Source: Octopus sinensis
Lineage: Eukaryota
Assembly (NCBI RefSeq): GCF_006345805.1
Contig: NC_043006.1
Coordinates: 4,154,001 to 4,218,000, forward strand
DNA length: 64,000 nt
Direction: 5' to 3'
Shown here: positions 19,669 to 47,708 of the stretch, one piece after another
Layout of the letters: each line of letters starts with the position of its first letter
How positions within the stretch are numbered: position 1 is the stretch's first letter
Notes under the pieces: model-generated
Database searches by the model: none
What the model was told of the DNA's origin: nothing
What the model saw: the letters and a program-made list of their open reading frames with translations, nothing else
Translations under genes and position numbers: made by a program

Positions 19669-21850
19669 GGAAACATATACGTTTATTGAAGAGAATAACC
19701 TCTTTCCCACTGAACAAAAAGGATGCAGACGAGGTTCATACGGATGCAAAGATCAGCTCCTAATTAATCGCTTGATCCTTGAGAACTGCCATAACAAGCG
19801 CAGAAATCTCAGCTCTTCATGGATTGATTATAAAATAGCCTTTGATAGCATACCACATTCGTGGATTCTGAAATCGCTGGACATTTTCAAAATTTCTCCT
19901 GTGATTTCAGATTTTTTAAAGTATAATATGTCACTATGGAACACGAAGCTCCAATTATATCATTCTAATGGAGTATTGCACTCAAACAACATTAGCATAA
20001 ACTGTGGAATTTTCCAAGGTGACTCATTTTCATCACTAATTTTCTGCATAGCACTAATACCACTCTCAAGTGAACTGAATAGAACAGGATATGGCTACAA
20101 AATTGACAACAGGAAAATAAGCCATCTATTTTATATGGATGACTTAAAGTTATATGGCAAAGATGATGAAGGGTTTGAAGGATTATTACATACTGTGAAA
20201 GGATTCAGTGATGATATCGGGATGGAGTTTGACCTTGAAAAGTGTGCCAAAGCCACTTTTAAGAAAGGGAAATTGGTAAAGTCTAGTTCAATCGAATTAG
20301 ATGTCGAAATAGTAATAAAGGAACTTGAGCAGGAACAAACCTATAAATACCTAGGAATAAATGAAGGCTCTGGTATCCAGCATGCAAGCATGAAAGAGAA
20401 GGTTAGGAAAGAATGTTATTGAAGAATTCGAGTAGTCCTGAAATCTGAGATGAATGCATATAATAAGGTTTTAGCCATAAATTCTTTAGCAGTACCAGTT
20501 GTTCTTTATAGCTTTAATGTGCTTAACTGGAATACCACTGAAATAATGAAAATTGACAGAAAAATCCGCAAGCTACTGACTTGTAACATGAAGCACCATC
20601 CAAAGGCAGACGTGGATCGTCTTTACCTTCCCAGAGCTCAAGGAGGCCGAGGTTTGATACAGCTTGAACTTACATACAAAACCACCACAATCAGACTGGC
20701 CAAATACCTTGAAGCATCCAACGATTGGATGCTAAAACTTGTTGAAAAACATGAAAGACCTAAAAAACTTCACTCTATTCTCAAAGAGAGCAAAAAATTC
20801 GCTGCTGATCTCTTAGATACCCACCAGATTGATCTGGCTGAAGGAAATGCGCCAACTGCAGCTGTAAAGAAAATAAAATTAATTGCAAAGACAAAAGCAC
20901 ATGAAAATTTAGCTAGCAGATGGGAACAGAAACCTCTGCATGGCAGGTATGTGGCCCGTAGCAAACAAGCTGATGTCGACCAGAAACACACGCACCAATG
21001 GTTACGAAGCTCAGGGCTAAAAGCAGAAAGTGAAGGTTTCATATTAGCTGCTCAAGACCAATGCTTATTAACCCGGAACAACCAAGCCAATGGGATAAAA
21101 AATGGAGCTGACCCAAAATGCCGATTCTGTAACGATGAGATTGAAACAATAGACCACCTAATCTCAGGGTGTAGAGTCTTAGCACCTGCAGAATATAAAG
21201 CAAGACATGACAGAGTCGGCCAGTATTTACACTGGTCAATATGTCGGCATTATAAAATCAAAATCGCTGACAAATGGTATAAACATCATCCTGAAGCTGT
21301 GACTGAGGGAGAAAATGTGTCGATTATATGAGACTTCCCCGTGCAGACCGACAGGACTATAAAGCTAATAAACCGGATATTATTATAAAATATCAGACAA
21401 AAAGGATGTGTTTATTAATTGACATGAGTATTCCCTGTGATCACAATATAGCGGCGAAAGAATTTGACAAGATTAGTAAATATAAAGACCTGCTAATAGA
21501 AATTGAAAAAATGTGGCATCTCAAGGCGACTACAGTACCAGTGATTGTAGGATCTCTAGGAATGATAAAAGAGGTACTGAAACCTATTTGAAAATGATTC
21601 CAGGCTTACCATCCCTAGAGGAAGTGCAAAAAATCGTATTAACTGGAACGGCTCATGTACTGAGAAGAGCACTATCGCTGTGAAAATAACATCCATCCAT
21701 GAATTTATTTATTTATTAATTTTTAAATACATATTTTATCTGTGAATTTGCGCGTGTAATCTAGGAATGCATACAATGCCCTTCTCTGCCCTAGGTGTAT
21801 GGAAAACACTCGGCGAGGAACGGAAGAAAATTTGAAGAAAGAGGGAAAAA
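19669..21850 (+). mobile_element. R4/Dong-clade LINE, second subfamily, 5'-truncated
   Basis: GIFQGDS.S.L.F, HLFYMDDLKLY, RLYLPRAQGGRGL, CRFC..ETIDHLISGC, KPDII..KY; premature stop at 20420. Confidence 0.9.
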
Positions 21851-24458: not shown

Positions 24459-25589
24459 TGTATATATATATATATATGCATGCACACCCACACATAGAGG
24501 CACATGTATAGACATAATAAGAACAGTGTGTACCAGCATAACCACCGTCGCCACCAACAGCAATAACAACATTAAACCTTTTGGCCTAATTCACACTAAC
24601 TTTGTCAATAAAATACAAAACCACAAATTGATGAGAATTTAATGACATAATTTCAAACTAATTAACGACATAAAATATTTATGAAAGATTAATGTATAAC
24701 AAGTTAATAGCGGTAAGATGGCGACCTACTACTAAACAACTGTAGCTATTAATACTAACTCCTATACTATACATTAGATAATGTAGTCCTAGATACACTA
24801 TGCCTGAATAAAAGATTCGATGGTCACAACTGGAATATCTTTTATCATAGGTATGTCTGGATCAAGACTGACCTGGGGCTAAACAACAACTATAGGCACT
24901 AATACTACACATTAGATAATGTAGTCCTAGATACACTAGGCCTGAATAAAAAATGGGATGGTCACAGCTGGAACATCTTTGATCATAGGTCTGCCGGGAT
25001 CATGACTGACCTGGGGTTAAACAACAATTATAGCTACTAATTCACTCTGTCTGAATAAAAGACGTGTTGGTCATGGCTGGAACCTCATTAGTTAGAGAGC
25101 TGCTAGATATGTGATTGATCGTGTCTCTCGCAGACAAACCCGAAAAGAAGAAATAGGAACCGGCCGTAATGCAGCCACACCAAGATGGCTGCCGCTCGAC
25201 TTTGAACAATTTATCAATAGTGGTGAAGCTGTGGCCTTAATGCCTCTCTGCGGGTTGGTCTTATAAAGCATCACGTGTTGCTTGTTATAGTTTATCTTTT
25301 TTCCGTGTCGAAAGATTTAAGCCAAACAAATGAACTCGAGGATTTGCAGATTATTTTTTCAAGATTAGGACTAATCTAACGTTCTCTTTTGCCAAACTAT
25401 TAAGTTGCGAAGACGGAAACAAACCTACTCCGGCTGTCAGGTGATGTGAAGGTTAAAGATACTGAGAAGAATTGGAATGAGCCCTTCTGTCATTGACCAA
25501 AATTGACATTTCATGATTTGACGAATTAATTCGCACTACCCCCCCCCGTTCCCAAATAAATCAACGTGTGAACAAACGAAAATATGTCT

Positions 25590-25990
25590 CTTATTCTTTT
25601 CTACTCGAGGCACAAGGTCTGCAATTTGGGGGGAGGGGGCCAGTTGATTAGATCGACTCCAATACGCAACTGGGACTTAATTTATCGACCCCGAAAGGAT
25701 GAAAGGCAAAGTCGACCTCGGCGGAGTTTGAACTCAGAACGTAAAGACAGATGAAATACCTATTTCTTTACTACCCACAAGGGGCTAAACACAGAAGGGA
25801 CAAACAAGGACAGACAAATGGATTAAGTCGATTATATCAACCCCAGCGCGTAACTGGTACTTATTTAATCGACCCCGAAAGGATAAAAGGCAAAGACGAC
25901 CTCGGCGGTATTTGAACTGAGAACGTAAAGACAGATGAAATACCGTTAAGTGTTTCGTCCGGAGTACCACCGTTTCTGCCAGCTCACTGT
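25590..25990 (-). mobile_element. Family-A SINE, tandem dimer
   Basis: Two cores (GAAAGGCAAAGTCGACCTCGGCGG) about 185 bp apart. Confidence 0.85.
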
Positions 25991-26144
25991 CTAAGTATGT
26001 CGCTTATTGACACGTCAGCAGGTTAATAAACGTGTTCGCTTACACCTTCAATATGCTTAAACATATTTCACTTAAGCCTCCAACGTGACAATAAATCGCC
26101 ATATTTCGCCCAGTCTATCATTTTGTCAATAAACAATATATTTA

Positions 26145-26365
26145 AGGCGGCGAGCTAGCACGCCGGGCGAAATGCGTAGCCGTATTTCTCCTGCCGTTAC
26201 GTTCTGAGTCCAAATTCCACCGAGGTCGGCTTTGCCTTTCATCCTTTCGGGGTCGATTAAATAGGTACCAGTTACGCACTGGGGTCGATATAATCAACTT
26301 AATCCGTTTGTCTGTCCTCTCTGTGTTTGGCCCCTTGTGGGTAGTAAAGAAATAGGTATTTCGTA
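26145..26365 (+). mobile_element. Family-A SINE
   Basis: Head, B-box, core and tail ending AAAGAAATAGGTATTTCG. Confidence 0.85.
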
Positions 26366-26856
26366 CATCTGATATCGAAAATTTATTATTGGAGTGTGCT
26401 TGTGCCTATTGTTGGATTTATTGTTGAAAAAATTGTATTATAGTTTTCTTTCGAATGTTATCTGTGGTTTTCCCCTGTGGGGGAAAACATTAATTGCCGG
26501 CAAGATGCCGAAAAGTGTGTCTTCGTCGGATGATGAATCATCGACTGAGCGAGAAGGAAGGAAAATAGAAAGTTTAATTTTTGACTACGTTTCTGATGTG
26601 TCGGAAAGTGAATTCTCTATTTACCAAAAGTTACGAATACCAAAACACCTGATCTGAGATCGTGTGCTGAAACGAAAACAATTGCAGCGTGGAAGGTGTT
26701 TATAAGCTATTTAAAAACACACAAAAACCGTTAGATTCACTTCAACATTTAAATTTAATTTGCCAAAATATTTTCGTCTCTTTCAGACCGCGACCTGTTC
26801 ACTGATAGAATTCCGTGCAGTGATCAGATCGCGGTCTCAAAGCGACGAATATATTT

Positions 26857-26909
<53 letters not shown>

Positions 26910-27403
26910 TTTAACCAATCAATCAATTAATGTTGTTATCATGCAATGCCTGCGCAAGAAGATTTTTTTTAAGTGAGGAAAGGTTGTGCACTGAGTCAAT
27001 CCCACTCACTAAGCAACAGCAGCCATAATCCGAAAAGAAGAACAAGTCGACATCACCAGTAACCACTGAGCCGCAGGTTTTATGTCGGAGTTATCCCAGT
27101 TACCTGAGTTACCTTCTCCTAGAAGGATGCCCTAACAAAGGCTAGGAGTCCTTCACTCCCAATGGTTTAACCGCGCGATCGGGCATGTGGAAGAGAGTGT
27201 AATTCGGCAGGAGGACTTAAACGACATGCAAAGGTACATGAAGCCCAGTTACAACTACAACCGGCTATTTCCGGTAAAGGTTTTAGTTGCCAATTTTGTA
27301 CAAGACATTGTAGATCTTTAGCTGGGCTAAAAAACGCATTCGATCACAGCACCAGTAACAGTTAAGCTTCGTGCAATGGCCATATTCGATAACGAGGGGG
27401 CAG

Positions 27404-27439
<36 letters not shown>

Positions 27440-27659
27440 CATACATAGATGCATAGTCTGTTATGTCTGGGGAGGGTCGTTTTCTTTTTGTGCCTTATAA
27501 TATAACACACTCACCGGTAAAATTTCCACTTAATCCTTATTTTTATTTTCCTCAAATTTTCGTTACGTCTTGCAACCTTTTCAATAGTCTTGTACACTGC
27601 GTTTCTTTTTGTTTGTTTGTGCGCATGTGTGTGGGTCAGTGTGCGTGTGTGCCTATATA

Positions 27660-28520
27660 TGCATGTATGTATGTATGTATGCATGTATGTATGTATGTAT
27701 GTATGTATGTATGTATGTATGTGTGTGTGTATGTATGTATGTATGTATGTATGTATGTATGTATGTATGTATGTATGTATGTACGTATGTATGTATGTAT
27801 GTATGTACGTACGTATGTATGTATGCATGCATGCATGCATGCATGTATGTATGTATGTATGTATGTATGTATGTATGCATGCATGCATGCATGTATGTAT
27901 GTATGTATGTATGTATGTATGTATGTATGTGTGTGTGTATGTATGTATGTATGTATGTATGTATGTATGTATGTATGTGTGTGTGTATGTATGTATGTGT
28001 GTGTGTATGTATGTATGTATGTTTGTATGTATGTATGTATGTATGTATGTATGTATGTATGCATGCATGCATGCATGCATGCATGCATGTATGCATGTAT
28101 GCATGTATGTATGTATGTATGTATGTGTGTATGTATGTATGTATGTGTGTATCATATGTATGTATGTATGTATCATATGTATGTATGTATGTATCATATG
28201 TATGTGTGTATGTATCATATGTATGTGTGTATGTATGTATGTATGTATGTATGTATGTATCATATGTATGTATGTATGTATCATATGTATGTGTGTATGT
28301 ATGTATGTTGTATGTATGTATGTATGTATGTATGTATGAATGTATGTATGTATGTATCATATGTATGTGTGTATGTATGTATGTATGTATGTGTGTATGT
28401 ATGTATGTGTATGTATGTGTATGAATGTATGTATGTATGTATCATATGTATGTGTGTATGTATGTATGTATGTATGTATGTATGTATGTATGTATGTATG
28501 ATGTATGTATGTATGTATAT
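27660..28520. repeat. About 860-bp (ATGT)n microsatellite with ATGC, GTGT and ATCAT variant blocks
   Basis: Direct reading; source of the long spurious CMYV/HTYI ORFs. Confidence 0.97.
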
Positions 28521-28595
28521 GTGTTCATCTGTATGTATGTATTCTGCATATTCATGTGCTTGCATGTCCGTGTTTGTGTATTTTTTATATATGTG

Positions 28596-28635
<40 letters not shown>

Positions 28636-28719
28636 ATATAATATAATATACACCCTAAGTTTAGGTGCTCTATACTTTCAATCTATATACCACCTAATAC
28701 ATTATTAGGTGGTCTATAG

Positions 28720-28754
<35 letters not shown>

Positions 28755-29346
28755 CATGATTATTATTATTATTCAGGTCACTGCCTGGAATTGAACTCGG
28801 GATCTTCGGATTAGTACCCAGCGCTCTTAACCACTACGCCATATGATGAAAGCTGGAGGGTGTATCAGCTGAAACGCTGTGTTAACAACGGACAAGATGA
28901 CAAATGTCCGTCAAATGTAAATAATGTAAACAATGTAAATAATCTAGCACTCTGTTTTCCCTTTTCTCCTTCCCTTTTCTTTTTTCCCCCTAATCCTTTA
29001 GACCAATGCTATTTTCCTTCCTTCTTACATTCTTCTCGATTCTCTTCTCTCTATCTACTTCCCCCTACCAGTATATTCTCAAAATTTCATCCACACTACA
29101 AGCATGAATGAACAGCACATGGAATGAATATCTAGTCACGTGTGAGTTGCGACGTCACAGGTGCCAAGCTGTATCTACCTTTGTCTTTCCCTTGGATAAC
29201 ACTGGTGGCGTGGAGAGGGGAGGCTGGTATGCATGGGCGACTGCTGGCCTTCTATAAAACAACCTTGCCCAGACTTGTGCCTCAGAGGGTAACTCTCTAG
29301 GTGCAATCCCATGGTCACTCATGACCGAAGGGGGTCTAAGTCTAAG

Positions 29347-29407
<61 letters not shown>

Positions 29408-29942
29408 TATATATTATATATATATATATATATTATGCAGCGTGCATGATCATATACATATGTGCATGTGTGTTTCTGTGCGTGTGTGTGTATGTTGTGT
29501 ATGTGTGTGTGTGTATGTTTGTGTGTGTGCGTGTGTGTTTGTGTATGTGTGTGTGTGTGTGTTTGTGTGTGTGTTATGCGTGTTCTAGAACATGGGACGA
29601 ATAGTTTGTGAAGAAAATGTTTGTTTAATTTTAAATAATACTTAATTAACGAGGCGAAACGAGATGATTGCTCGACGACACGCAGACAGCGTAGATGGAA
29701 GTAGGGAGGGGGGAGGAAGTATGCGGTAGAGAACGCCAGTTGGGACAGGCAGAGAGCGATATCGTCGTTTGTTTTCGTCCATCAGTAAACCTCTCCACTC
29801 ATATCAAGCACACACTTTGATCAAGGGCCTCACAACACGAGTGTGAGTGTCCACTCTCACTCTCACAGCAAGAGTGTCATCTCTAGCTCTTTCTCTCCCT
29901 AACAGACTGAAAGGCCTCATTGTGTGGCCCTGCCCCCAACTG

Positions 29943-29950
29943 CATATAAG
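29943..29950 (+). promoter_or_regulatory. Candidate TATA-like element of the M4 protease gene
   Basis: CATATAAG about 170 nt upstream of ATG 30119, in a unique, non-repetitive stretch. Confidence 0.35.
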
Positions 29951-30118
29951 GATCACCACCTAAAAATTCGGCTGCCTCGGATGTTTGTCTATGGTTACTA
30001 TTATAACTGTCTCCAGTTTGAAAGTCCACTATTTCATCTCCGTAGTGGCTGTACTTGACCAGTTGCTGCTGTTTTCCACTTCTGACTGACCAGTGTGACA
30101 GAGAGGGAGAGAAAGATA

Positions 30119-30167
30119 ATGGCTGCCTGTATCGGTGGGATTCACTTCCTTTTTCTTTTATTACTCG
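30119..30167 (+). CDS. Exon 1 of the M4 metalloprotease gene (first part of signal peptide, MAACIGGIHFLFLLLL-G)
   Basis: AGATAATGG start context; strong donor G|GTGAGT at 30167/30168; phase 1 matches acceptor TCTTTCTAG|GC at 35292/35293 and gives a continuous hydrophobic leader. Confidence 0.8.
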
Positions 30168-30299
30168 GTGAGTAAAACACGCATTTTCTAGGTTTGCATC
30201 TGTGTTTGTATGTGTGTCTCTGTGTATGCATACGTTTGTGCATGCGCTTGGATGTAATTATGTATGTGACTATATTTTCAAATGCGTAGATAGATAGAT

Positions 30300-30603
30300 T
30301 GGAGGCGCAATGGCCCAGTGTTTAGGGCAACGGACTCGTAGTCGGAGGATCGCGTTTCGATTCCCAGAGCGGGCGTTGTGTGTATTTATTGAGCGAAAAC
30401 ACCTAAAGCTCCACGATGCTCCGGCAAGGGGTAGTGGCGACCCCTGCTGTACTCTTTCACCACGACTCTCTCTCTCACTCTCTCTTCCTGTTTCTTGAGT
30501 AACGCAGAGATGGACTGGCGTCTCGTCCAGCTGGGGGGAACACATATGCCAGAGAAACCGGGAAACCGGGCCCATGAGCCTGGTCAGGCTTGAAAAGGGC
30601 GCA
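30300..30603 (+). mobile_element. tRNA-derived SINE, family C (intronic)
   Basis: GGAGGCGCAATGGCCCAGTG head, TTCGATTCCC B-box, shared body. Confidence 0.85.
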
Positions 30604-31412
30604 TAAAAAAAGATAGATAGATAGAGATAGATATACAGAGAGAGAGAGAGAGAGAGAGACAATGAGGGAGAGAAAGAGTGACTTTTTAAAATGCAAATTA
30701 TTGTGTTTGTCTTTTACGTGTTCCAGTCATTAGACAGCGGTCTATTATTTTATAATTATTATATGCGAATTAAAATCTGAAAATATTAATAGTGATTACT
30801 TTGTTAAATAATTTGGTAATTAAATATTGGAGTATAACTGAGTTAAAGATATTCTATAATTTACTAAAGTGTTTTTTTAAGCTAAATTATATCTTCACAG
30901 ATAAATACATATTTCTATCTATTTACTCTTCTTTTTTAGCATAAATATTAAATATTTAACATAATAAATGTGTTGTAGGAAATAATCCTAATGTTTTAAG
31001 TTTCAAATTTAGTTAATGGACTTTCTTCTATAATAAAAAAAAATATTATTTTATTTATTTTTAAATAAGTATTGTTTAACTCTATTTGCTTATTTATTTA
31101 ACTATTATTGTTAACCTGAAGATTGATGACTATAATTTTAAATTGAATTCATTTCAATTAAATTTAAATTTAATTGTAATTAGAATTTAATTGTACCCAT
31201 GAAACGTACTTAGTTTTTTTACTTAATATATATCAATCATTCATTTTTATACTTTTTGTGATCTAGTTCTATGTTTTATAAAAATATATATTATTTGATA
31301 TTTATATTCTGATTTATGTCTATCACTTTTTGAATTGCATAATAGTGGTTTTTATCTCTAATTTATAATTTATATATATATACATACGCACTGGTACATA
31401 CAGACAAACATA

Positions 31413-31460
<48 letters not shown>

Positions 31461-31814
31461 TTGATATGAGAGACGGGAGATGGAAGGAGCGAGAAGGTTT
31501 ATTGATTACTACTATTGTTTGGACTTATCTAGCATCGATCCCTCATTGGTGAGATACTGCACTACTGGTTTAGGTACATTTGTCCGTGTAGATGTGTCTC
31601 CTTAGATGGTTACAAAATGTATCTTGTTAAGTACTGTTCCGCAAGAAAAGGGCTTCATTTTTATAGAAATTCAATAACAAATATCAGATGCGGAAAGAAA
31701 CGGACACAAAATCGAGCGCAAAAAGTATTGAATATTACCGTTAACAGATGCAGATATATGAAAGCCTCGGTGTGGGTTGTATGGCGCACGTACGCGAGCT
31801 CATACAAACATTCA

Positions 31815-32085
31815 CGTAGATATAACTGGTACTTAATTTATCGACCCTGAAAGGATTAAAGGCAAAGTCGACCAACGGAATACGGAGAGGACAAACAAGG
31901 ACAGACAAACGGATTATGTCGATTATATCCACCCAAGTGTGTAATTGGTACTTGATTTATCGACCCCGAAAGGATGAAAGGCAAAGTCGACCTCGGCGGA
32001 ATTTGAACTCAGAACGTAACGGCAGACAAAATACGGCTAAGCATTTCGCCCGACGTGCTAACGTTTCTGCCAGCTGGCCGCTCTT
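31815..32085 (-). mobile_element. Family-A SINE, partial tandem (intronic)
   Basis: Core and head in reverse orientation. Confidence 0.8.
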
Positions 32086-32670
32086 TCATGTATCTAAATA
32101 ACGTGTTTACATTGCGTCACCTCCATAACCACAATGATTATTATTACCACCATCGTTCTTCCTATAGCATTTACAATCATCAATTATAATATGGGTCCCG
32201 GTATATTGCAGCAGATCTTCGTCCCTTTTTATCAAATACTCGGCAAGCGTTCTCCTTTCACTCCTTATACAGTGTTCTCAGCCCTGCATCACCATTCTTT
32301 CTTTTCATATACAGTCTGTTTACGTTTGTAGTTAACACTTATTATTATTATAGGAAGAATGGCCAGTATGAACGGACCAATTCTGAGGTTACACCCGTAA
32401 CAAAAATGGTAATGTAAAAGGAGAAAAGGGCTCTCTAGCCCCTTTTTGACCAGGCTTCCGCGGTTTTTATGGGTTTTTCCACGAGTAACCTTTCGAAGCG
32501 CCCCTCCCTATAGGGAGTTTTATTTGTTATATTTTTCGTTGTTAACTTGCATTTTTACACGGACCTTTCAAACGGACAAAACCCTTTTTGTAACTTTCGT
32601 CCTGTATTTTGTCTTTACATGTTTCATTTGATTTTTGTTAGCCCTTGTGGCCAATCAACGAATTAATTAA

Positions 32671-32734
<64 letters not shown>

Positions 32735-32774
32735 GTTATTATTATTATTATTATTATTATTAATATCATACTCT

Positions 32775-33177
32775 CTCTTTCTCTTTTCTCTCTTTTACTT
32801 GTTTCAGTCATTTGACTGCGGCCATGCTGGAGCACCGGCTTTAGTCCAGCAACTCGACCCCGGAACTTATTCTTTTGTAAGCCCAGTACTTATTCTATCG
32901 GTCTCTTTTGCCGAACCGCTAAGTAACGGGGACGTAAACACACCAGCATCGGTTGTCAAGCAATGCTAGGGAGACAAACACATACACACACATACATATA
33001 TATATATATATACATATATACGACAGGCTTCTTTCAGCCTACCAAATCCACTCACAAGGCATTGGTCGGCCCGGGGCTATAGCAGAAGAAACTTGCCCAA
33101 GATACCACGCAGTGGGACTGAACCCGGAACCATGTGGTTGGTTAGCAAGCTACTTACCACACAGCCACTCCTGCGCC
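32775..33177 (-). mobile_element. Family-B SINE (intronic)
   Basis: Closely similar to 15265-15720. Confidence 0.85.
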
Positions 33178-33185
33178 TGATATTA

Positions 33186-33238
<53 letters not shown>

Positions 33239-33248
33239 GTTGTTGTTG

Positions 33249-33309
<61 letters not shown>

Positions 33310-33310
33310 T

Positions 33311-35256
33311 TTTTTTTTCTTCTTTCAAATTTGCTTCCATTTCTTGCCGAGTGTCTTCCCGACTCCTAGGGCAAAGAAACTCATAGTATACATTGGTAGG
33401 CCATTAAACCAAACTCAATAGTTCGTTCATTTTTTATTTTTTTAAAGTTAAATTAAAATACATGAGCAGCAACAGTTCTCACATCGACAATACTCTTCTC
33501 AATACGTGTGATGTACCAGCTAAGACAATCTTTTGCACTTCTTGCAGGGATGGTAAGCCAGGGATCATTCGCATATAATTTTCGGTTCCCTTCTTGATCA
33601 TTCCTAGTGCTCCTACGATCACTGGTATTGTAACCGCCTTGAGATGCCACATTTTCTCAATTTCAATGGGTAGGTCTTTATATTTTCTGAGCTTGTCAAA
33701 CTCTTTCGCTGAGATATTATGATCACAGGGGATGCTCATGTCGATCAATAAGCAAACTTTATTGTTTTGGTCTTTCACAAAAATATCTGGTTTATTGGCC
33801 TTCATGGTTCGGTCTGTATGTACTGGAAAGTCCCACAGAATGGTTACATTTTCTCCTTCAGTTACAGCCTCAGGGTGGTGATTATACCACTTGTCGGCAG
33901 TTTTGATATTGTAATGCCGACTTATTAGCCAGTGGAGATATTGGCCAACTCTGTCATGTCTTAATTTATACTCCAATGGTGGTAAGACTTTACATCCAGA
34001 GATTAGATGGGCCACTGTTTCAATCATGTCGTTGCAGAATCGGCATTTTGGGTCTGCTCCATTTTTCATCACATTGGCCTGGTAGTTCCGGGTTAATAGG
34101 CTTTGATCTTGAGCAGCCAGGATGAAACCTTCGCTCTCTGCTTTTAGCCCTGAGCTCCGTAGCCACTGATGGGTTTGCTTCTGGTCAACATCAGCTTGTT
34201 TGCTGCGGGTCACATATTTGCCGTGCAGAGGTTTCTCCTCCCACCTATCAGCCAATTGCTCGTGCGCTTTTTTCGTTGCCATCATTTTCACCTTCTTTGC
34301 AACAATAGTTGCCGTACTTCCCTCGGGTTGTTCAGTTTGGGTATCCTGCACGAGATCAATAGCAAATTTTTTGCATTCCTTTATGATAGAATGAAGCTTC
34401 TTTCGTCTCTCGTGATTTCCACGAGCTTTAGCATCCAGTCATTCGATATTTCGAGATATTTGGCCAGTCCAATTGTGGTTGTTTTGTAAGCTAGTTCAAA
34501 TTGGATCAGGCCTCGACCTCCTTGGGCTCTGGGAAGGTAAAGGCGATCTACGTCTGCCTTTGGGTGGTGCATCCTATTACAACTCAGCAGCTTGCGTATT
34601 TTCCTATCTATATTCTTTACTTCACTCATATTCCAGTTCAACACATTGTAGCTATAAGTAACAACTGGAACTGCTAAGGAATTTATAGCTAACACTTTGT
34701 TATGTGCATTTAGTTCAGATTTCAGGACTGCACGAACTCTCCTATAACATTCCTTCCTGATCTTCTCTTTCATGCTTGCATGCTGAATACCAGAGCCTTC
34801 ATTTATCCCTAAATATTTGTATGTTTGTTCTTGCTCAAGCTCTCTTATGACTGTGTCAACATCTAACACGACTGAATTTGTGGTCTTCCCTTTCCCTTTC
34901 TGGAAAGTGGCCTTGGCACACTTCTCAAGTCCAAACTCCATCCGATGTCATCGCTGAATGCTTTCACGGTGCGCAATAGGCCTTCAAGTTCATTATTGTC
35001 TTTACCATAAAGTTTTAAGTCATCCATATAAAATAGATGGCTTATTTTTTTATTGGCAATTTTATACCCATACCCTGTTCTGTTAATTCACTTGTAAGGG
35101 TATTAGGGCTATGCAGAATATTAAAGGTGAAAGTGAGTCACCTTGAAAAATTCCACAGTTGATGTTATATTTTCTGAGGCAAGTACTCCATTAGAGTGGT
35201 ATAATTGGAGATTCGTATTCCACAACGACATATTGTGCTTCAGGAAGTTTGAAATA
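33311..35256 (-). mobile_element. R4/Dong-clade LINE (same subfamily as 19669-21850), 5'-truncated, inside the protease intron
   Basis: ORFs 33479..34351 and 34381..34941 plus HLFYMDDLKLY at about 35010-35040; 3' UTR like 21780-21850; (TAA)n tail 33180-33310 and (ATT)n 35255-35283 on the other side. Confidence 0.92.
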
Positions 35257-35292
35257 TTATTATTATTATTATTATTATTATTATCTTTCTAG

Positions 35293-37100
35293 GCTTCCTG
35301 GTGAGCCACGTTGTGACGTCAGCAAAATGGCGACAGGCCAGGGATGTGTTCCTGTCCAATGTGGATACCTTGAGCGAGACAATGAAGCGACAACCAAGTC
35401 ACATGATCACCACACGTGACCTATTCGGTCTGACCGAAGACGAGGACGTCACGCTGATGGACTCAGCACCGAGTGAGCAAGGAACCATCATCAAAAAGTA
35501 CGGCGAAACTTATAAAGGACTTCCGGTATTCGATGCCAGCCTCACTGTGGAGACGGACGCCAATACCGATGTGTACACTGGTCAGGTGACCGGAAAACTG
35601 GCTCAGAACCTTGACGATGACATCAGCTCTACAGTACCAACTTTGAACGAGCCGGAGGTGATGCTATTAGCTGCCAACTACGGAAACTTTTCTATGGAAG
35701 AGGCCCGCATAGACTACGATAAACTCCGGTTGACGATCTTCGTGAAGGACAACGTAGCAATCTTGGTGTATCGAATTCAATATTATGCCGTATCTAATGG
35801 AAAAAATTATCGATTTTGCATGCTAATCGATGCGAATAATGGAATGCTTGTTAAAAAATGGAACACACTAGAAACTGCAAAAAACAAATACAAAATGAAA
35901 GGTGTCGGGGGTAACAAATTGATAGGTAAATTGAGATACGGAGAAGAACTACCATATTTGGAAGTGACACGTGAGGGCGATGATTGTTATTTCGGCAACG
36001 ACATCGTTACAGTGGTGAATCTAAAGGAGGAAGAGTCTTTCTGCCTAACGAGGCAGAAAGTGTTTATAATGTAAAATGCAACACTGCTGCGATGGATGAA
36101 GCGAACGGAGCTTCTTCTCCGATAAACGATGCTATTTTCTATGGCAACGTCGTCTACAATATGTACAAAGAATGGGTGAAGATATCCCCGGTGAAAAAGC
36201 TGCCAATGGCTCTCCGCGTACACTTTGGCCAAAACATAGTGAATGCTTTTTACAATGGAAGAAACTTCTCGTCCGGTGACGGCGACAGGGAGTATCGGCC
36301 GCTAGTAAGTCTTGATATCATTGCACACGAAATAACCCATTGCTTCATGGAGGAACTTTCGGGCTTGATATACGAGGGGTAGTCGGGTGGTATCGACGAA
36401 TCGTTCAGTGACCTGGCTGGGGAGGCAGCCGAAAAGTTTTTAATCGTGTTTTAATCGTGTCTACGATTCCAATTCGCAACGTGTGTAACCAATCAACTGA
36501 TGGGAGGTCGATAATACATGCTGGCGACTACAATGATCTTATGGACGTACACTACTCAGTGGGGTATTCAACAGGTTTTACTGTCTGTTAGCCAGAAGGA
36601 GAGGATGGAATACGAAAAGGGTTTTAAAGGATGCGGCACATTCCAATCGTTTCTACTGGCATCCGACAACTACTTTCGTTGAGGCCGCTTGCGACTTCAT
36701 GAAGTCCGCTTATGATTTTGGCTATGATACTAAACCGGTAGAGAGAGTTTTTAGAAAAGTTGGTATAAAAGTGTGTGATCTGTCTTCGTACATCCGAACA
36801 GTGCACCAGAACTCAAAAATCGAGGACCTAAGTGCGATCCCTGAAGAAGAAATCATGTTTAAACTGAAGATAAAGTCAGAATTGAAGAACGTGAAAATTG
36901 CTACGTTTGGCGGTATAGGAGAAGCAGATCTGTTTGTTTGCTACAAGAAACTCCGCTGCAATGAGCATTTGACGAAATGGCGATCGAACAAGCCCGGGAC
37001 AAACCAGAAAATTTTAATGGAGAGTCCAAAGAAAGGTAGATATTTCATAATATTAAAATCAAAAGTCGAGGATTTTATCAAAGATGTAACTTTAAAGTAA
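35293..37100 (+). pseudogene. Exon 2 of a thermolysin-family (M4) neutral zinc metalloprotease, vibriolysin/LasB-like: FTP-PepSY propeptide, catalytic domain, C-terminal PPC domain; disrupted
   Basis: KYGETYKGLPVF (FTP), LIDANNG.LVKKW (PepSY), GVGGNKLIGK.RYG, NGASSPINDA.FYG.VV, VHFG..VNAFYNG..GDGD..PLVSLDIIA-HEITH (36326-36340), SGGID-E-SFSD (E 36398), DGRSI, MD-V-H (36550), FGGIGEADLFV (PPC); lesions at about 36033, 36380 (TAG), about 36440-36470 and about 36557. Confidence 0.92.
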
Positions 37101-37147
37101 CGTTAGAAGAAAAGTGATAAGGAGAAAAAGATCCCTTGTTTCAAAAT

Positions 37148-37153
37148 AATAAA
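37148..37153 (+). promoter_or_regulatory. Candidate polyadenylation signal of the M4 gene
   Basis: AATAAA about 50 nt after the TAA at 37098-37100; AT-rich context lowers specificity. Confidence 0.4.
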
Positions 37154-37335
37154 AGAAAATAGTTATGAAATTTTATAAGTTTTAAAATAAAGATATGAAT
37201 TCATTGTATGACTTTTTAAATTGAATTAGTTGTTTCAACAAATACCTTCTGGGTTAAAATGGCTGGCAAAGACAACAAAAGGAGAAAACGTGTGACCGAA
37301 ACAAAATTATATATGTACACATACATATATATATA

Positions 37336-37373
<38 letters not shown>

Positions 37374-38799
37374 AATGTGACAAGGTGGAAAAAAGAGTAC
37401 TCAAATACCAGTGGTAGAGTAATATGCTTTATTTTAAGCAGCAGAATTCAACAAAATCTGTTACTCTGAGTTTCTCGTTGCCGTTCATCAGACAGTTTTT
37501 TGCTAGAATGGAACTGATATATCAATTCAATCTATACTCTTACAAACGCTACACCTTTAAAAAAGAAATGGACTTGTTTGATTGGCCCTTTAGAAAAAAC
37601 GGTCAATCTTCGAGCGATAAACAAAAAGGTCAAAAATATGTATATATATATAAAAAACTTATAAAATTATAAATCCGAGGAAAAAACCTATGACGTTAAT
37701 GAAGACAGTGCAAATAATGCATAGAAATTAAACCTGTTATAAATAATGCAATACATATTTATATTAAAATCTACATATATATTCAACATACACAAAGGAT
37801 GCGCGTAAACGCCATACATACATATACAGACGTATGATATAAATCTAAATATACACATAAAAGCATGTGTACATATATTCACGCAAACCGTCTCGCACGC
37901 AAGCTAAAATTCATCTATGTAGCAATTCTATATACTGAGCAAGGAGGGGAACGAAAGAAAGGGAGAGAGAGAAAAAAGGAAGAAGGAGGGGTGGGGGAAA
38001 AAACGAATAAGAAAAAATTATGTATACAAGCAGTGTAACGGTATTATTGGCATATATAGAGACCAGTATACATACACAAGTTTGAATGGATACACATACA
38101 TACAGTCGTGTATATGTGTGCTTAAGTACAAACATACTTTCACTTACACATACACAGATACGCATGCTTACAAATACATATGCTTTGCTATACACATACT
38201 TATATAAACATTCTAATTTTGACAACATTGCTTTTTTAAAAAAAAAACATTGCTTTTAAAAATGGGTGCATTAATAAAAATATATACGAAAGATATATAT
38301 ATACATATATATATACATATATATACACACACACACACACGCACACACACACACACACACATATATAATTATATATATATATATATATACAAGCAGTTAA
38401 GCCCGGTTTCACCCGGTCTGTTTGGATGATGTGGCTGTGATCGTTTTCGGTTAGGCATAATCTATAACAGCTTCAGGAGTTCTGAGGAAAGAATTTTTAC
38501 GTAGTCTGTTTCTGAAAGCTAATCTATTGCACCTCTCTCTAATTACACTGATCAACAAAATGAAACTTTCCTTTTAATCATCAGAGTTGCTTATTGACTT
38601 TTCTGGGTTAAATTTCGATGCTGATTACGAATCCGAAGTCCGATTTTCTCAAACCGGTCACATTTTCATGTTAATGATACCTGATGTGTTAACTTATAGG
38701 ATATGTAAAGCATGTCTATATAAAGTATATTGAATACAAGATACGATAATTTCATGGCTTTTTATTGTACAAAATTAAAACTATTGTGTACGAATAAGT

Positions 38800-40040
38800 T
38801 AGAATACACTCAAATGCATAACAACTTGAAATCTTTGGGATTCGGACATTCTATGGTGTTTTGTCTGCGGTTCATCTCTATATAACATCCAACAGTAGTC
38901 ATCTAACATTCCTGCATTCCAAAATCCTTGATAGCATTGTTCCATCGATGCAATATCTTGATGAAAGCGTTCCCCTTGCTTATCAGACACTGGTCCAAGG
39001 TTCACTGCAAATGGCTGTGTGGTAAGTAGCTTGCTTACCAACTACATGGTTCCGGGTTCAGTCCCAATGCGTGACACCTTGGGCAAGTGTCTTCTACTAT
39101 AGCCTCGGGCCAACCAAAGCCGTGTGAGTGGATTTGATAGAGGGAAACTGAAAGAAGCCCGTCGTATATATATATATATACATATGTAGTTGTGTGTGTG
39201 TGTGTGTGTGTGTGTGTGTCTGTCTGTCTGTCTGTATGTATGTATGTATGTGTGTATATGTTTGTGTGTCTGTGTTTGTCCCCCAACATCGCTTGACAAC
39301 GGATGCTGGTGTGTTTACGTCACCGTAACTTAGAAGTTCGGCAAAAGAGACCGATAGAATAAGTACTAGGCTTACAAAGAATAAGTCCTGGGGTCGATGT
39401 GCTCGATTAAAGGCGGTGCTCCAGCATGGCCACAGTCAAATGACTGAAACAAAAGAGTAAAGAGAGAGAGAGAGAGTAAAAGAGTATGTGAATTAAGGAA
39501 ATGGACATTTTGTGACATCCGACAGCGTAGGCGTCTAGAAGACATTTCATTCCATTTCTAAACTCTAGAGATCTCTTGTTGCCTAGGAAAATTTCACAGA
39601 ACCATTTGAAGTTTTCCTAGGCTTTAAGCTCAATCTCATCCAGTGTTGCGAGGATGTGGTTGTCCTTCAGGAGTTCTTTTATCTGCAAACCTATGATGAA
39701 TACGCCCTCCTACAGTTTTGCCTCGGTGATTTTTGGGAATTTGGCCTTCATATAATCAAAACCATTTGAGCTTTTCCTGACAAGTGTCTTCACGAATTGT
39801 TGCACGAGGCCAAGCTTTATGTGAAGAGGGGGAAGAAGAACATTTTGGGGGTTTAAAAGTGGCTTACTCTGGAGCTAGAAACTCCTGGTTCATATGATTT
39901 TAGCAAAGGCCACTCTGATTGCAAATAGTGCTTGTTAGTTGCACGACTGTCCCACAGGTATAAAAAGAAATAATATTTCGTGAACCCAAGTTGTATTCCC
40001 TTCAACATTCTAATCATCTTCAAGTCTCCACATATTTTCC
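38800..40040 (-). mobile_element. Degenerate DNA transposase, probably CMC/Chapaev-like, split by a SINE
   Basis: W.ICGDLKMI, WDSRA, LLPPLHIKLGL.QQFVK, EGVF and VSD.QGERFHQD..ME..YQG.W..DYCW motifs; family label is from recall. Confidence 0.65.
39010..39485 (+). mobile_element. Family-B SINE nested in the transposase
   Basis: GGCTGTGTGGTAAGTAGC head; tail GCAGTCAAATGACTGAAAC-type. Confidence 0.85.
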
Positions 40041-40059
40041 AACTGTAGTTTGTATACCC

Positions 40060-40500
40060 TGTGTGTTTAGCCCCTTGTGGGCAGTAAAGAAATAGGTATT
40101 TCGTCTGCCGCTACGTTCTGAGTTCAAATTCCGCCGAGGTCGACTTTGCCTTTCATCCTTTCGGGGTCGATTAAATAAGTACCAGTTACGCACTGGGGTC
40201 GATATAATCGACTTAGTCCGTTTGTCTGTCCGTGTTTGTCCCCTCCATGTTTAGCCCCTTGTGGGTAGTAAAGAAGTAGGTATTTCGTCTGTCTTCACGT
40301 TCTGAGTTCAAATTCTGCCGAGGTCGACTTTGCCTTTCATCCTTTCAGGGTCGATAAATTAAGTACCAGTCACGCACTGGTTCGATATAATCGATTTAAT
40401 CCGTTTTTCTGTCCTTGTTTGTCGCCTCTGTGTTTAGTCCCTTGTGGGCAGTAAAGAAATAGGTATTTCGTCTGTCTTTACGTTCTGAGTTCAAATTCCG
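40060..40500 (+). mobile_element. Family-A SINE body in tandem (2 full units plus a partial third, period about 185 bp)
   Basis: TAGCCCCTTGTGGG..AAAGAA.TAGGTATTTCGTCTG junction repeated three times. Confidence 0.85.
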
Positions 40501-41090
40501 CTGTCAAGTTACCACACGGAGTCCAGTGGAAAGTTTGAAATTCTAAAACATTAAAAGGACATACTAATATACGAAGATAATGTTCAATTGATCCGAATGT
40601 TTTGTCGACGGGCTGTTGAAATATGACATAAATATCATATTTCAATGTAACTTGTGAATTTTTATTCTCTTGTATCTTATAGTGTGAATTAATAAGTTAA
40701 TATGTCTTATATTCATCTTTTCTATTTTGCTTAAGTATTTATATATATTTATGAGTATTTTTAAATACCTACGAGTTTTTATCTTACATCATATCGACGT
40801 TTTTTATATCTACTTTGCGTTTATATATTTTTAAATATTAAATATTTATATGCTCGTATGTTTTTAATACTAATATTATTTCGAACTTTATATTGATTTA
40901 TTAATGTCGAAGAAAGTACACATACATATTGAATATTCTATTGGATAATAGGTTATGTTCCTCTAGTTTTCCGTTCGTATTTCTTCCATTCAAATTATAA
41001 ATTGGAACTTGGCTCAATTTGAGCACTTTGATTCTAGCCTGTTTCTGAGTATTGTTAATGTTAGCAATCTTTATATAAAATAGTACAATA

Positions 41091-42370: not shown

Positions 42371-42598
42371 CTGTTGAAGATAGAACAATAAGAAATTACA
42401 GGAAAAACATTAACAATAATATAAGAGTTGTCTATTGCAACTCTCCAGCAAAGGACGTTCAATTTTTACAGATAATCTCTAAATGAGGCATCAATCCCCT
42501 CTTCCAAAAAAAAACAATACCTATTCTATTGTGCTTCATTAATTTATCCATTTTACCAATCAGGCTAATCTCAATTTTATTGAATCCCATCAATGTCT

Positions 42599-43559
42599 TT
42601 AACCCTTTCGTTTCCGTACTTATTTTGAGATGCCCTGTATTTCCTTCAATTAATTTTAAATTAACAAAGAATTTAGTAAAATAGCTTAATTTATCATTAA
42701 GCTAGTGTTAGGAACAGTATTTGTGACTAAGGTTTGGTGGAAGATTTTAATTCAGAACTTATGAAAACAAGACATTTGTACTACAGAGCCAGAGGCGGTT
42801 CCAGCCAGGTTGATATCGAAAGGGTTAAAAATATCATGGTCACTTTAACCCTTTTGTTACCATATTTCTGTTGAGACGTTCTGTGTTTCTTTCAATTACT
42901 TTAAATATAACAAAGAATTTAGTAAAATATCTTATCCTTAAGCTAGTGTTAGGAACATAAATTGTGACTAAGGTTTGGGGAAAGATTTTCATTCAGAACT
43001 TATGAAAACAAGACATTTGTACTACACAAGCAGAGGTGGTTTTAGCCAGGCTGATATTGAGAGGGTTAAAAATATCAGAGTGACTTTAACCCTTTCTTTA
43101 CTGTATTTATTTTGAGATGCTCTGTGTTTCTTTCAATTACTTTAAATATAAAAAGAAGTTAGTAAAATAACTTAGTTATCATCAAGCTAGTATTAGGGAC
43201 ATAAATTGTGACTAAGGCTTAGCGGAAGATTTTAATTCAGAATGTATGAAAACAAGACATTTGTACTACAGAGCCAGAGGCGGTTTCAGCCAGGTTGATA
43301 TCGAAAGGGTTAAACATATCATGGTCACTTTAATCCTTTTGTTACCATATTTCTGTTGAGACGTTCTGTGTTTCTTTCAATTAATTTTAAATATAACAAA
43401 GAATTTAGTAAAATAACTTAGTTATCATTAAGCTAGTGTTAGGAACATAAATTGTGACTAAGGTTTGGTGGATTATTTTAATTCACAACTTATGAAAATA
43501 AGACATTTGTACTACACAGCCAGAGGCGGTTTTGGCCGGGTTGGTATCAAAAAGGTTAA
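42599..43559. repeat. Tandem array of four about 230-bp TTAA-bounded (piggyBac-like) MITE units
   Basis: Each unit TTAACCCTTT...AAGGGTTAA; units start at 42599, 42845, 43086 and 43330; 16-nt spacers. Confidence 0.85.
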
Positions 43560-43679
43560 TAGAATTATTTTACAGTTAAAATTTCAAAATGGAAATTAGG
43601 AATGGAACCTGTTCTCAGTCATTCTGACATACAAAAGTTCAAGTGAAGGTAAAATTCAGTATTGTTATTTTATACTCAC

Positions 43680-47160: not shown

Positions 47161-47414
47161 ATGGTGTAAAACAAACAAAAACATCACCCATTTATTCGCC
47201 TGTTTACATCAAAATCCATAAAGACAATATTAACTCTATTGCGTTTCCTTGGTGGATATTTTATGATATTTCAGGAACATCGTTAACAGAATTACTTTAC
47301 AGCTAACTGTTCAAATGGAAATTAGGGATCAAACCTGTCCCCAGTCAAACAAAATAGCTGAACTAAGGATAAAACCGATGGAAGTCAATAAAAGTGTTGC
47401 AATGTTTTACTCAC

Positions 47415-47708
47415 CATCTGGCTCTGATGTACAACGCTCAGGTTGTGATGTAGAAAGCATAGATTGTGATGTAGAACGCTCAGACTGTGATGTAAAAGGC
47501 TCAGGCTGTCATGTAGAAGGCATAGGCTGTGATGTAGTCCGCTTAGACTTGACGTAGAAGGTTTAGGCTGTGATGTAGAAGGTATAGGCTGTGATGTAGA
47601 CCGCTTGGGCTGTGATGTAGAAGGCATAGATTGTGATGTAGAAGGCATAGGCTGTGATGTAGAACGCTCAGGCTGTGATGTAGAAGGCTCAGGCTGTGAC
47701 TGGAGTGT
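47415..47708 (-). CDS. Candidate VNTR exon, 13 x 21-bp units encoding Q-P-x-P/R-S-T-S; carries a 1-bp deletion and a TGA
   Basis: Acceptor TTTTTATTTCAG|ACA, donor GATG|GTGAGT; restoring the missing C at 47549/47550 gives 295 nt, which joins in frame to the death-domain exon. Confidence 0.6.

What the first reader, a model, noticed from the sequence alone, without database searches (positions are those of the whole stretch)
30119..35330. Signal peptide of the M4 protease is split by a 5.1-kb phase-1 spliceosomal intron
The ORF finder starts at an internal GTG (35301). Upstream there is an acceptor TCTTTCTAG|GC at 35292. About 5.1 kb further up is a 49-nt exon, ATG...CTC G|GTGAGT (30119-30167). 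Splicing gives MAACIGGIHFLFLLLL-G-FLVSHVVTSA|KWRQ, a clean eukaryotic signal peptide with a predicted cleavage after VTSA. A TATA-like element lies upstream and AATAAA downstream. Inference: a bacterial coding region was domesticated by gaining a host promoter and a secretion exon. This is also the best internal argument against bacterial contamination.
Basis: partly seen in the sequence, partly recalled or inferred. Interest (0 to 1): 0.8.

Follow-up and report, generated by a model that had tools for sequence, protein, structure and literature searches.

The report
Split signal peptide, broken octopus protease
The 49-base first exon and 5.1-kb intron that split the signal peptide are real, but they are an old feature shared by mollusc M4 protease genes, they are already in the public Octopus sinensis annotation, and this copy is a recently duplicated, broken gene.

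Summary
Observation confirmed. Exon 1 (30119-30167, 49 nt, phase 1, CTCG|GTGAGT) joins the acceptor TTTCTAG|GC at 35293 and gives MAACIGGIHFLFLLLLGFLVSHVVTSA|KWRQ.

- Six intact relatives share the plan of a 46-55 nt phase-1 exon, one 2-11 kb intron and one large exon: four Octopus genes, two Argonauta genes (one only ~33% identical) and the scallop gene.
- The window is O. sinensis CM016868.1:4,154,001-4,218,000. The exact spliced 276-aa product is already an annotated gene there.
- The bacterial-type origin of these octopus Zn-metalloproteinases is published (PMC6011040).

Interpretation only partly right.

- This copy is a duplicated pseudogene of the intact gene XP_029652155.1 on another chromosome (dS 0.087). 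It carries a +2 insertion, a CAG>TAG stop 17 codons after HEITH, a 25-nt complex deletion and two 1-nt deletions. The spliced ORF stops before the active site.
- The architecture was inherited. The family spans cephalopods, bivalves and a chiton.
- The cleavage region in exon 2 aligns with the bacterial signal-peptide end, so an intron inserted into an existing signal peptide is at least as likely as a captured secretion exon.

Contamination is excluded. Low novelty.

The parts
29796..30118 (+). Promoter-like region and 5' UTR conserved among Octopus M4 paralogues. It includes the TATA-like CATATAAGG at 29943-29951.
   Evidence: Alignment of window, L009, L001 and L002 upstream regions; blastn window 29796-30228 vs L001/L002.
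30119..30167 (+). Exon 1 coding part: 49 nt, phase 1. It encodes MAACIGGIHFLFLLLL plus the first base of Gly17 (n-region and most of the h-region of the signal peptide). Donor CTCG|GTGAGT.
   Evidence: Homologous 49-nt exons in L001, L002, L009, L010; 55 nt in L003 and L004; 46 nt in L012. Start of the annotated gene.
30168..35292 (+). U2-type GT-AG intron, 5125 nt, phase 1. Contents: SINE-like repeat 30287-30495, 184-bp satellite 31879-32100, microsatellites ~32660-33320, reverse-transcriptase fragment on the minus strand 33479-34941, dispersed repeat 35100-35256, and an ancestral (ATT)n tract up to the acceptor TTTCTAG.
35293..36035 (+). Exon 2, first intact stretch: end of the signal peptide (GFLVSHVVTSA|KW), the propeptide (weak FTP match) and the start of the catalytic domain. 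About 95% identical in protein to the intact paralogue.
36036..36037 (+). Lesion 1: a 2-nt insertion (TC) causing a frameshift. The spliced ORF then runs into TAA at 36072-36074, which is the end of the annotated 276-aa product.
36326..36340 (+). HEITH zinc-binding motif (HExxH) of the M4 catalytic domain, now in a different frame from the start of exon 2.
   Evidence: (Peptidase_M4 E=1.3e-19).
36380..36382 (+). Lesion 2: an in-frame TAG where intact copies have Gln (CAG). It lies between HExxH and the third-ligand Glu codon (36398-36400).
36436..36460 (+). Lesion 3: a complex indel. There is a net 25-nt deletion, about 13 codons present in the intact copies are missing, and there is an 11-bp tandem duplication (TTTTAATCGTG x2). 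It causes a frameshift.
36555..36556 (+). Lesion 4: a 1-nt deletion, not in a homopolymer, causing a frameshift. The three body indels sum to -24, so the C-terminal part is back in the original frame.
36564..37100 (+). C-terminal helical domain remnant and C-terminal beta-domain, 97% identical to the intact copy. Lesion 5 is a 1-nt deletion in an A-run at 37093, giving a stop at 37098-37100, seven or eight codons early.
37148..37191 (+). Two AATAAA poly(A) signals (37148, 37186), conserved in the intact paralogue.

Best explanation
The locus is a non-processed (duplicative) pseudogene of a molluscan secreted M4 (vibriolysin/pseudolysin-type) zinc metalloprotease gene.

The family has a fixed two-exon plan. 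A promoter region, a 5' UTR and a 46-55 nt first exon encode the N-terminal two thirds of the signal peptide. One phase-1 U2-type intron follows. One large exon encodes the rest: the end of the signal peptide with its cleavage site, the propeptide, the catalytic domain and the C-terminal domain.

This plan arose once, early in molluscan evolution, after or while a bacterial-type M4 gene became an animal gene. It was then copied with every duplication.

In O. sinensis a segment containing the intact gene XP_029652155.1 (chromosome CM016885.1) was duplicated to CM016868.1 after the split from O. bimaculoides. The new copy kept a spliceable exon 1, intron and exon 2, but acquired five disabling lesions.

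If it is transcribed and spliced as annotated, it can encode only a 276-residue fragment (signal peptide, propeptide and the start of the catalytic domain) without the zinc site.

Shown: sequence features, homology of junctions, lesions, duplication, annotation. Inferred: single ancient origin of the intron, loss of function, actual splicing and expression of this copy.
For: - Junction and product. The exact 276-aa product is annotated at this locus, and L011 is identical to window 25119-41074.
- Same phase-1 plan elsewhere:
  - L001 O. bimaculoides, exon 49 nt / intron 2464 nt
  - L002 O. sinensis, 49 / 6212
  - L003 Argonauta, 55 / 4677
  - L009 O. sinensis, 49 / 11284
  - L010 O. bimaculoides, 49 / 5917
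  - L004 Pecten, 55 / ~3.96 kb
  - L012 Argonauta distant subfamily, 46 / 2090
.
- P0007 and Octopus introns fall in the same alignment column.
- Upstream ~330 nt is conserved among paralogues.
- The window is colinear with L009 at 88-95% across flanks, intron and exon 2.
- dS is 0.087 for window vs L009, against 0.25 for the O. sinensis vs O. bimaculoides orthologues.
- Lesions. Four of the five are not homopolymer-type.
- Window-branch changes are 9 synonymous and 15 non-synonymous, several of them radical; the intact branch has 23 and 19.
- All named molluscan sequences form one clade with SH-aLRT 90. It includes scallops, a pearl oyster and a chiton.
- Contiguous-ORF contigs shaped like mRNAs (UTR-like flanks of varying length), from four sequencing runs in a relative, carry the signal-peptide codons contiguously.
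- cDNA of family members was amplified from octopus hepatopancreas (PMC6011040).
Against: - No RNA reads for this locus were available, so splicing of this particular copy rests on annotation and homology.
- Lesions were not checked against raw reads. The A-run deletion at 37093 could be an assembly error.
- Pairwise dN/dS (0.30) equals that of intact orthologues (0.31), and the branch difference is not significant (Fisher p=0.21). The decay is therefore recent, and the case for non-function rests on the lesions alone.
- The Pecten intron lies 7 alignment columns from the Octopus one, so parallel gain in bivalves is not excluded.
- The tree is a quick search with an unknown root, and it includes some unlabelled sequences.
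Confidence: 0.85

Rival explanations
1. One reading: a bacterial ORF landed in the animal genome, and a host promoter plus a host 'secretion exon' was captured upstream. Exon 1 would then be host-derived, and the intron would be the former intergenic gap.
For: - Exon 1 has no detectable similarity to bacterial N-termini and lacks the Lys/Arg n-region of the bacterial signal peptides.
- Without exon 1 there is no ATG before the propeptide.
- A promoter region travels with exon 1 in all Octopus copies.
Against: - The c-region, the cleavage site and the first propeptide residues are in exon 2. They align with the bacterial ...AxA|A(E/T)RVDLH.
- Total signal-peptide length (about 22-28 aa) matches the bacterial ones, as expected if an intron was inserted into an existing signal sequence.
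- Signal peptides diverge too fast for either model to be proven.
- Whichever model is right, the event happened in an early mollusc, not at this locus.
Confidence: 0.3
2. The copy is intact in the animal, and the lesions are assembly errors in a long-read assembly.
For: - The 37093 deletion is in an A-run.
- The three body indels sum to -24 nt, so the C-terminus returns to frame.
- dN/dS is not elevated.
Against: - A CAG>TAG substitution, a 2-nt non-homopolymer insertion and a 25-nt complex deletion with an 11-bp duplication are not typical polishing errors.
- The annotation gives a truncated 276-aa product rather than a corrected full-length model.
Confidence: 0.05
3. The truncated gene is still used. 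It would express a secreted 276-aa signal peptide plus M4 propeptide fragment that acts as a stand-alone inhibitor or chaperone of paralogous M4 proteases.
For: - Exon 1, both splice sites, the promoter-like region and the first 244 codons of exon 2 are well preserved (95% aa).
- The premature stop lies in the last exon, so nonsense-mediated decay would not be expected (established knowledge).
- M4 propeptides are known to inhibit and fold their proteases (established knowledge).
- The locus is annotated as protein-coding.
Against: - There is no expression evidence. The exact-product look-up found only the genome contig.
- The downstream 'dead' part is equally or better conserved (97-98%), as expected for a young pseudogene rather than selective retention of the 5' part.
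- Window-branch substitutions in the propeptide include G153E, Q162R and M164T.
Confidence: 0.07
4. Bacterial contamination or an unintegrated bacterial fragment.
For: The closest non-animal relatives are bacterial M4 proteases at 33-37% identity.
Against: - The locus is on a 106-Mb chromosome scaffold, flanked and interrupted by octopus repeats.
- It has a spliceosomal intron shared with paralogues in four mollusc genera.
- GC content is like its surroundings.
Confidence: 0.01

Closest known systems
Octopus sinensis 'elastase-like' XP_029652155.1 (P0270; chromosome CM016885.1) and its O. vulgaris orthologue CAI9743405.1 (P0153)
   Same: - Same exon 1 (49 nt), same donor and acceptor sequences, same promoter-like region and same poly(A) signals.
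- Exon 2 is 93% identical in DNA, and the flanks are colinear.
   Different: - Those genes have an uninterrupted 632/633-codon ORF; the window copy has five disabling lesions.
- The intron is 5.1 kb here against 11.3 kb.
- The window copy lies on another chromosome.
Horizontally acquired Zn-metalloproteinases ZnMP1-7 of Octopus bimaculoides (PMC6011040)
   Same: - Same gene family. The ZnMP7, ZnMP2 and ZnMP1 cDNA fragments match the window at 89%, 78% and 75.5%.
- The paper reports these genes nested within bacterial homologues and expressed in hepatopancreas.
   Different: - The text I read does not mention introns (0 occurrences), gene structure or pseudogene copies.
- The family is broader than octopus: it also occurs in bivalves and a chiton.
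Bacterial vibriolysin/pseudolysin-type M4 pre-pro-proteases (MEROPS family M4)
   Same: - Sec-type signal peptide, propeptide (FTP), HExxH catalytic domain, helical C-domain and C-terminal extension.
- 33-37% identity.
   Different: - The bacterial genes are single ORFs. Here the signal peptide is split by a spliceosomal intron.
- This is an animal chromosomal gene.
- Pfam does not detect a PPC domain in the octopus proteins.
Excess of phase-1 introns around signal-peptide cleavage sites in animal genes (Tordai & Patthy; Vibranovski et al.; reviewed in PMC1626468)
   Same: A phase-1 intron within the signal-peptide coding region, 10 codons before the predicted cleavage site.
   Different: In this family it is the only intron of the gene, and the gene is of bacterial type.

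Membership tests
Peptidase family M4 (thermolysin-like) | Match to the Peptidase_M4 catalytic-domain profile above the curated cut-off | tested here: met
   Piece 35984-36379: PF01447, E=1.3e-19, 71.5 bits against a cut-off of 22.4.
Peptidase family M4 (thermolysin-like) | HExxH zinc-binding motif | tested here: met
   HEITH at 36326-36340.
Peptidase family M4 (thermolysin-like) | Third zinc ligand (Glu about 20 residues after HExxH) in the same reading frame, and an uninterrupted ORF | tested here: not met
   The Glu codon is present (36398-36400), but a TAG at 36380-36382 separates it from HExxH. The HExxH frame differs from the frame of the start of exon 2. There are three frameshifts in all.
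Peptidase family M4 (thermolysin-like) | Peptidase_M4_C helical domain | tested here: inconclusive
   Piece 36564-37097: PF02868, E=0.0087, 16.4 bits, below the cut-off of 24.4. The intact relatives carry PF02868, and the piece is 97% identical to them.
U2-type spliceosomal intron | GT...AG ends with consensus donor and pyrimidine-rich acceptor | tested here: met
   G|GTGAGT and ATTATCTTTCTAG|G.
U2-type spliceosomal intron | Same position and phase in homologous genes | tested here: met
   Seven other loci, all phase 1, all within the signal peptide. The Pecten position is offset by 7 alignment columns.
U2-type spliceosomal intron | Spliced transcripts of this very locus | not testable with these tools
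   Only indirect evidence: the public annotation uses this junction, and contigs shaped like mRNAs in a relative carry a contiguous signal peptide.
Eukaryotic secretory signal peptide | Hydrophobic core followed by small residues at -3 and -1 | tested here: met
   The Kyte-Doolittle 9-residue mean reaches 3.2 around residues 10-20. In VTSA|K, -3 is Thr and -1 is Ala (read from the sequence).
Eukaryotic secretory signal peptide | Predictor (SignalP) or experimental cleavage | not tested
Duplicative (non-processed) pseudogene | Disabling lesions, an identifiable intact parent, and a retained intron and flanks | tested here: met
   Lesions. Parent L009 is intact. Intron and flanks are colinear.
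Animal gene of bacterial origin (horizontal transfer) | Animal sequences form a restricted clade whose nearest relatives are bacterial, and the family is otherwise essentially absent from animals | tested here: inconclusive
   The mollusc clade is separate from bacterial hits (SH-aLRT 90; quick tree, midpoint root), and only molluscs are named among animal hits. The direction and number of transfers were not tested here. Transfer is claimed in PMC6011040.

The most novel reading that the evidence does not exclude
The two-exon plan, a phase-1 intron inside an inherited bacterial-type signal peptide, may be a single fossil of the domestication step at the base of Mollusca, kept for more than 500 million years (my own estimate of the age of the mollusc classes) in both subfamilies. 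In addition, this young broken copy may still express a secreted propeptide-only fragment that modulates its paralogues.
Probability: 0.06. Interest if true: 0.5.

Novelty: already known. Interest (0 to 1): 0.2.

Why it matters
The finding is a textbook-quality illustration of how a bacterial-type secreted enzyme gene looks once it is an animal gene: a promoter, one intron and a split signal peptide. It firmly excludes contamination for this window.

Its main practical value is corrective:
- This locus should be treated as a pseudogene (or at most a truncated gene), not as a functional protease.
- The 'octopus' transfer reported in the literature is really a pan-molluscan family whose gene structure predates cephalopods.

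Neither point changes current understanding of horizontal transfer or intron evolution.

Tried and rejected
1. I first thought the (ATT)n tract at the acceptor was the tail of the transposon copy at 35100-35256, which would have made the acceptor accidental. I rejected this because the same (ATT)n-rich acceptor is present in L009, L010 and Argonauta.
2. I looked for a second M4 copy or another exon-1 copy in the window and found none.
3. ARAGORN found no tRNA in the window, so the SINE-like repeat in the intron is not a recognisable tRNA gene.
4. The look-up of P0153's locus is not on record. I used the O. sinensis cluster-mate P0270 instead.
5. dN/dS was tried as a test of pseudogenisation. 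It was not informative: 0.30 against 0.31, and the branch counts give p=0.21.
6. The expected co-duplicated ankyrin gene downstream has no intact ORFs. The colinearity there is mainly a ~240-bp tandem repeat.
7. No search read the broken protein through a stop. Pieces were searched separately, and the intact relatives were used as queries against the window DNA.
8. The first literature query failed because one term was too short.


Full report
**What is in the sequence**

The window is eukaryotic DNA rich in microsatellites and retroelement remains. At 30119 an ATG opens a 49-nt stretch, ATGGCTGCCTGTATCGGTGGGATTCACTTCCTTTTTCTTTTATTACTCG, followed by GTGAGT. At 35292/35293 there is ...ATTATCTTTCTAG|GCTTCCTGGTGAGC. 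Joining the two in phase 1 gives MAACIGGIHFLFLLLLGFLVSHVVTSAKWRQARD.... The bacterial-code ORF finder does begin at GTG 35301. Upstream, in the same frame, there is only a poly-Ile run from (ATT)n back to a stop at 35250, with no ATG.

**Is it more than chance?**

Between 20000 and 35250 there are 2134 open phase-1 ATG...|GT mini-exons.

Comparison gives much stronger evidence. The search of representative proteins with the first intact piece of exon 2 found a 632-aa protein (P0001, Octopus bimaculoides 'elastase') that aligns from its residue 18. That leaves exactly 17 residues for an exon-1 product. I mapped intact relatives onto their genomic loci, and every one has the same plan:

| Locus | Protein | Species | Exon 1 | Intron |
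|---|---|---|---|---|
| L001 | P0001 | O. bimaculoides | 49 nt | 2464 nt |
| L002 | P0154 | O. sinensis | 49 nt | 6212 nt |
| L003 | P0156 | Argonauta hians | 55 nt | 4677 nt |
| L009 | P0270 | O. sinensis | 49 nt | 11284 nt |
| L010 | P0152 | O. bimaculoides | 49 nt | 5917 nt |
| L004 | P0158 | Pecten maximus | 55 nt | ~3.96 kb |
| L012 | P0007 | Argonauta, second subfamily (~33% identical) | 46 nt | 2090 nt |

All are phase 1, all have G|GT(G/A)AGT-type donors, and all have a single large second exon. In the N-terminal alignment the Octopus and P0007 introns fall in the same column, and the Pecten intron lies seven columns downstream. About 330 nt upstream of the ATG is conserved among Octopus paralogues. 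The TATA-like CATATAAGG (29943-29951) is conserved in three of four copies. Both AATAAA signals (37148, 37186) are conserved in L009.

**Where the window comes from, and what is already known**

The exact 276-residue spliced product (exon 1 plus exon 2 up to the first stop) is on record as a called gene in O. sinensis GCA_006345805.1, chromosome CM016868.1. The fetched locus is identical to window 25119-41074, and the gene span corresponds to 30119-36074. The public annotation therefore already uses this junction.

The family is published as horizontally acquired Zn-metalloproteinases ZnMP1-7 of O. bimaculoides, with cDNA amplified from hepatopancreas (PMC6011040). The ZnMP7, ZnMP2 and ZnMP1 fragments match the window at 89%, 78% and 75.5%. 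That paper's text does not mention introns.

**The copy in the window is broken**

I also aligned exon 2 at the nucleotide level with L009 and L010. The lesions are:

- a 2-nt insertion (TC) at 36036, which shifts the frame; the spliced ORF then ends at TAA 36072-36074
- CAG>TAG at 36380, seventeen codons after HEITH (36326-36340) and before the third-ligand Glu codon (36398-36400)
- a complex indel at 36436-36460: net -25 nt, about 13 codons lost, and an 11-bp tandem duplication
- a 1-nt deletion at 36555
- a 1-nt deletion in an A-run at 37093, giving an early stop at 37098

Only the last resembles a sequencing artefact. Pfam still recognises the catalytic piece (PF01447, E=1.3e-19). It recognises the propeptide FTP motif and the M4_C domain only weakly.

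**Origin of this copy**

The window is colinear with the locus of the intact O. sinensis gene P0270 (XP_029652155.1, chromosome CM016885.1) through the upstream flank, exon 1, intron segments, exon 2 and downstream repeats, at 88-95% identity.

- Synonymous distance is 0.087 for window vs L009. It is 0.25 for the O. sinensis vs O. bimaculoides orthologues and 0.21 for window vs O. bimaculoides. The duplication therefore postdates that species split.
- Pairwise dN/dS is 0.30, no different from intact vs intact at 0.31.
- With O. bimaculoides as outgroup, the window branch has 9 synonymous and 15 non-synonymous changes, several of them radical. The intact branch has 23 and 19, mostly conservative. 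The difference is not significant, p=0.21.

The decay is thus recent, and the argument for loss of function rests on the lesions.

**Age and origin of the architecture**

- In a quick maximum-likelihood tree all named molluscan sequences fall in one clade (SH-aLRT 90), apart from the named bacterial proteins.
- Its unlabelled members turned out to be scallop (Ylistrum), pearl oyster (Pinctada, both subfamilies) and chiton (Liolophura) proteins.
- One unlabelled group sits on AT-rich, gene-poor contigs that look like animal DNA. There the called ORF begins just upstream of an apparent acceptor, about ten codons before ...QTA|RW.

The family is therefore pan-molluscan. The phase-1 signal-peptide intron is present in both deep subfamilies, so it most likely dates to before their split.

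Bacterial relatives have their own Sec signal peptide ending ...AxA|A followed by (E/T)RVDLH. The molluscan cleavage regions align to it: DG|ARWMDVHD, EG|AYRVDAHE and TSA|KWRQARD. Hence the part of the signal peptide encoded in exon 2 looks inherited from the bacterial-type precursor, and the intron lies inside that inherited signal sequence. This fits intron insertion into an existing signal sequence at least as well as capture of a foreign 'secretion exon'. The data cannot decide between them. Phase-1 introns near signal-peptide cleavage sites are a general feature of animal secreted-protein genes (PMC1626468).

**Mechanism, as far as it can be stated**

In intact family members, transcription from the conserved upstream region and removal of the single intron creates an mRNA whose first 27 codons form a signal peptide. 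The hydrophobic core spans the exon junction, -3 is Thr and -1 is Ala. The pre-pro-enzyme would enter the secretory pathway and mature like bacterial M4 pre-pro-proteases; that last step is inferred from family knowledge.

In a relative, contigs shaped like mRNAs (a contiguous ORF with UTR-like flanks) from four sequencing runs carry the signal-peptide codons contiguously.

In the window's copy the same splicing is possible, because the donor and acceptor are identical to those of L009. The product, however, stops after 276 residues, before the zinc site. The stop lies in the last exon, so nonsense-mediated decay would not be expected (established knowledge). A secreted propeptide fragment is therefore conceivable, but nothing supports its use.

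**Verdict**

It is wrong to treat this locus as a working domesticated gene, wrong to place the gain at this locus, and unproven in claiming a gained secretion exon. Both the junction (public annotation) and the bacterial-type origin (PMC6011040) are already known. Interest is low.

Noticed in passing
window 47315-47557 (+): An ORF made of a ...CDVESIDCDVERSDCDVKGSGC... repeat. It matches the repeat-derived alternative C-terminal exon of the O. vulgaris isoform P0269 (767 aa), so the alternative 3' exon of the parent gene also seems to have been copied.
   Followed up: partly
window 61084-63898 (+): Two long overlapping ORFs (301 and 650 aa). The second has a strong reverse-transcriptase match (RVT_1, E=1.3e-34). 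This may be a nearly intact non-LTR retrotransposon.
   Followed up: no
window 16223-21331 (+): A string of reverse-transcriptase and zf-RVT ORF fragments with strong A-over-T skew: a decayed retroelement. Its segment 19904-20060 is a copy of the repeat that lies just before the M4 acceptor (35100-35256).
   Followed up: partly
window 25642-26364, 31879-32100, 40059-40503, 49888-50168: A ~184-bp tandem satellite, one block of which lies inside the M4 intron. The same satellite is in the introns and flanks of the paralogous loci L009 and L002.
   Followed up: no
window 42594-43560: A ~240-bp tandem repeat shared with L009 (28.5-30.2 kb), where it overlaps an annotated ankyrin-repeat gene on the minus strand. 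No intact ankyrin ORF was seen in the window.
   Followed up: partly
window 27463-28641: A long (TGTATG)n-like microsatellite gives spurious ORFs of up to 392 aa (CMYV repeats) on both strands.
   Followed up: no
L013 8001-9965 (ENA contig ctg33680l): An unlabelled relative (P0159) on AT-rich, gene-poor DNA. The called ORF starts just upstream of 'tttttctctacag|G', about 10 codons before ...QTA|RW, so a hidden first exon of the same kind is likely in another, unidentified animal genome.
   Followed up: partly
window exon 2 vs L009 and L010: With O. bimaculoides as outgroup, the intact copy (L009) has accumulated more substitutions (42) than the broken copy (24). This is unexplained; gene conversion or a rate difference are possibilities.
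   Followed up: no
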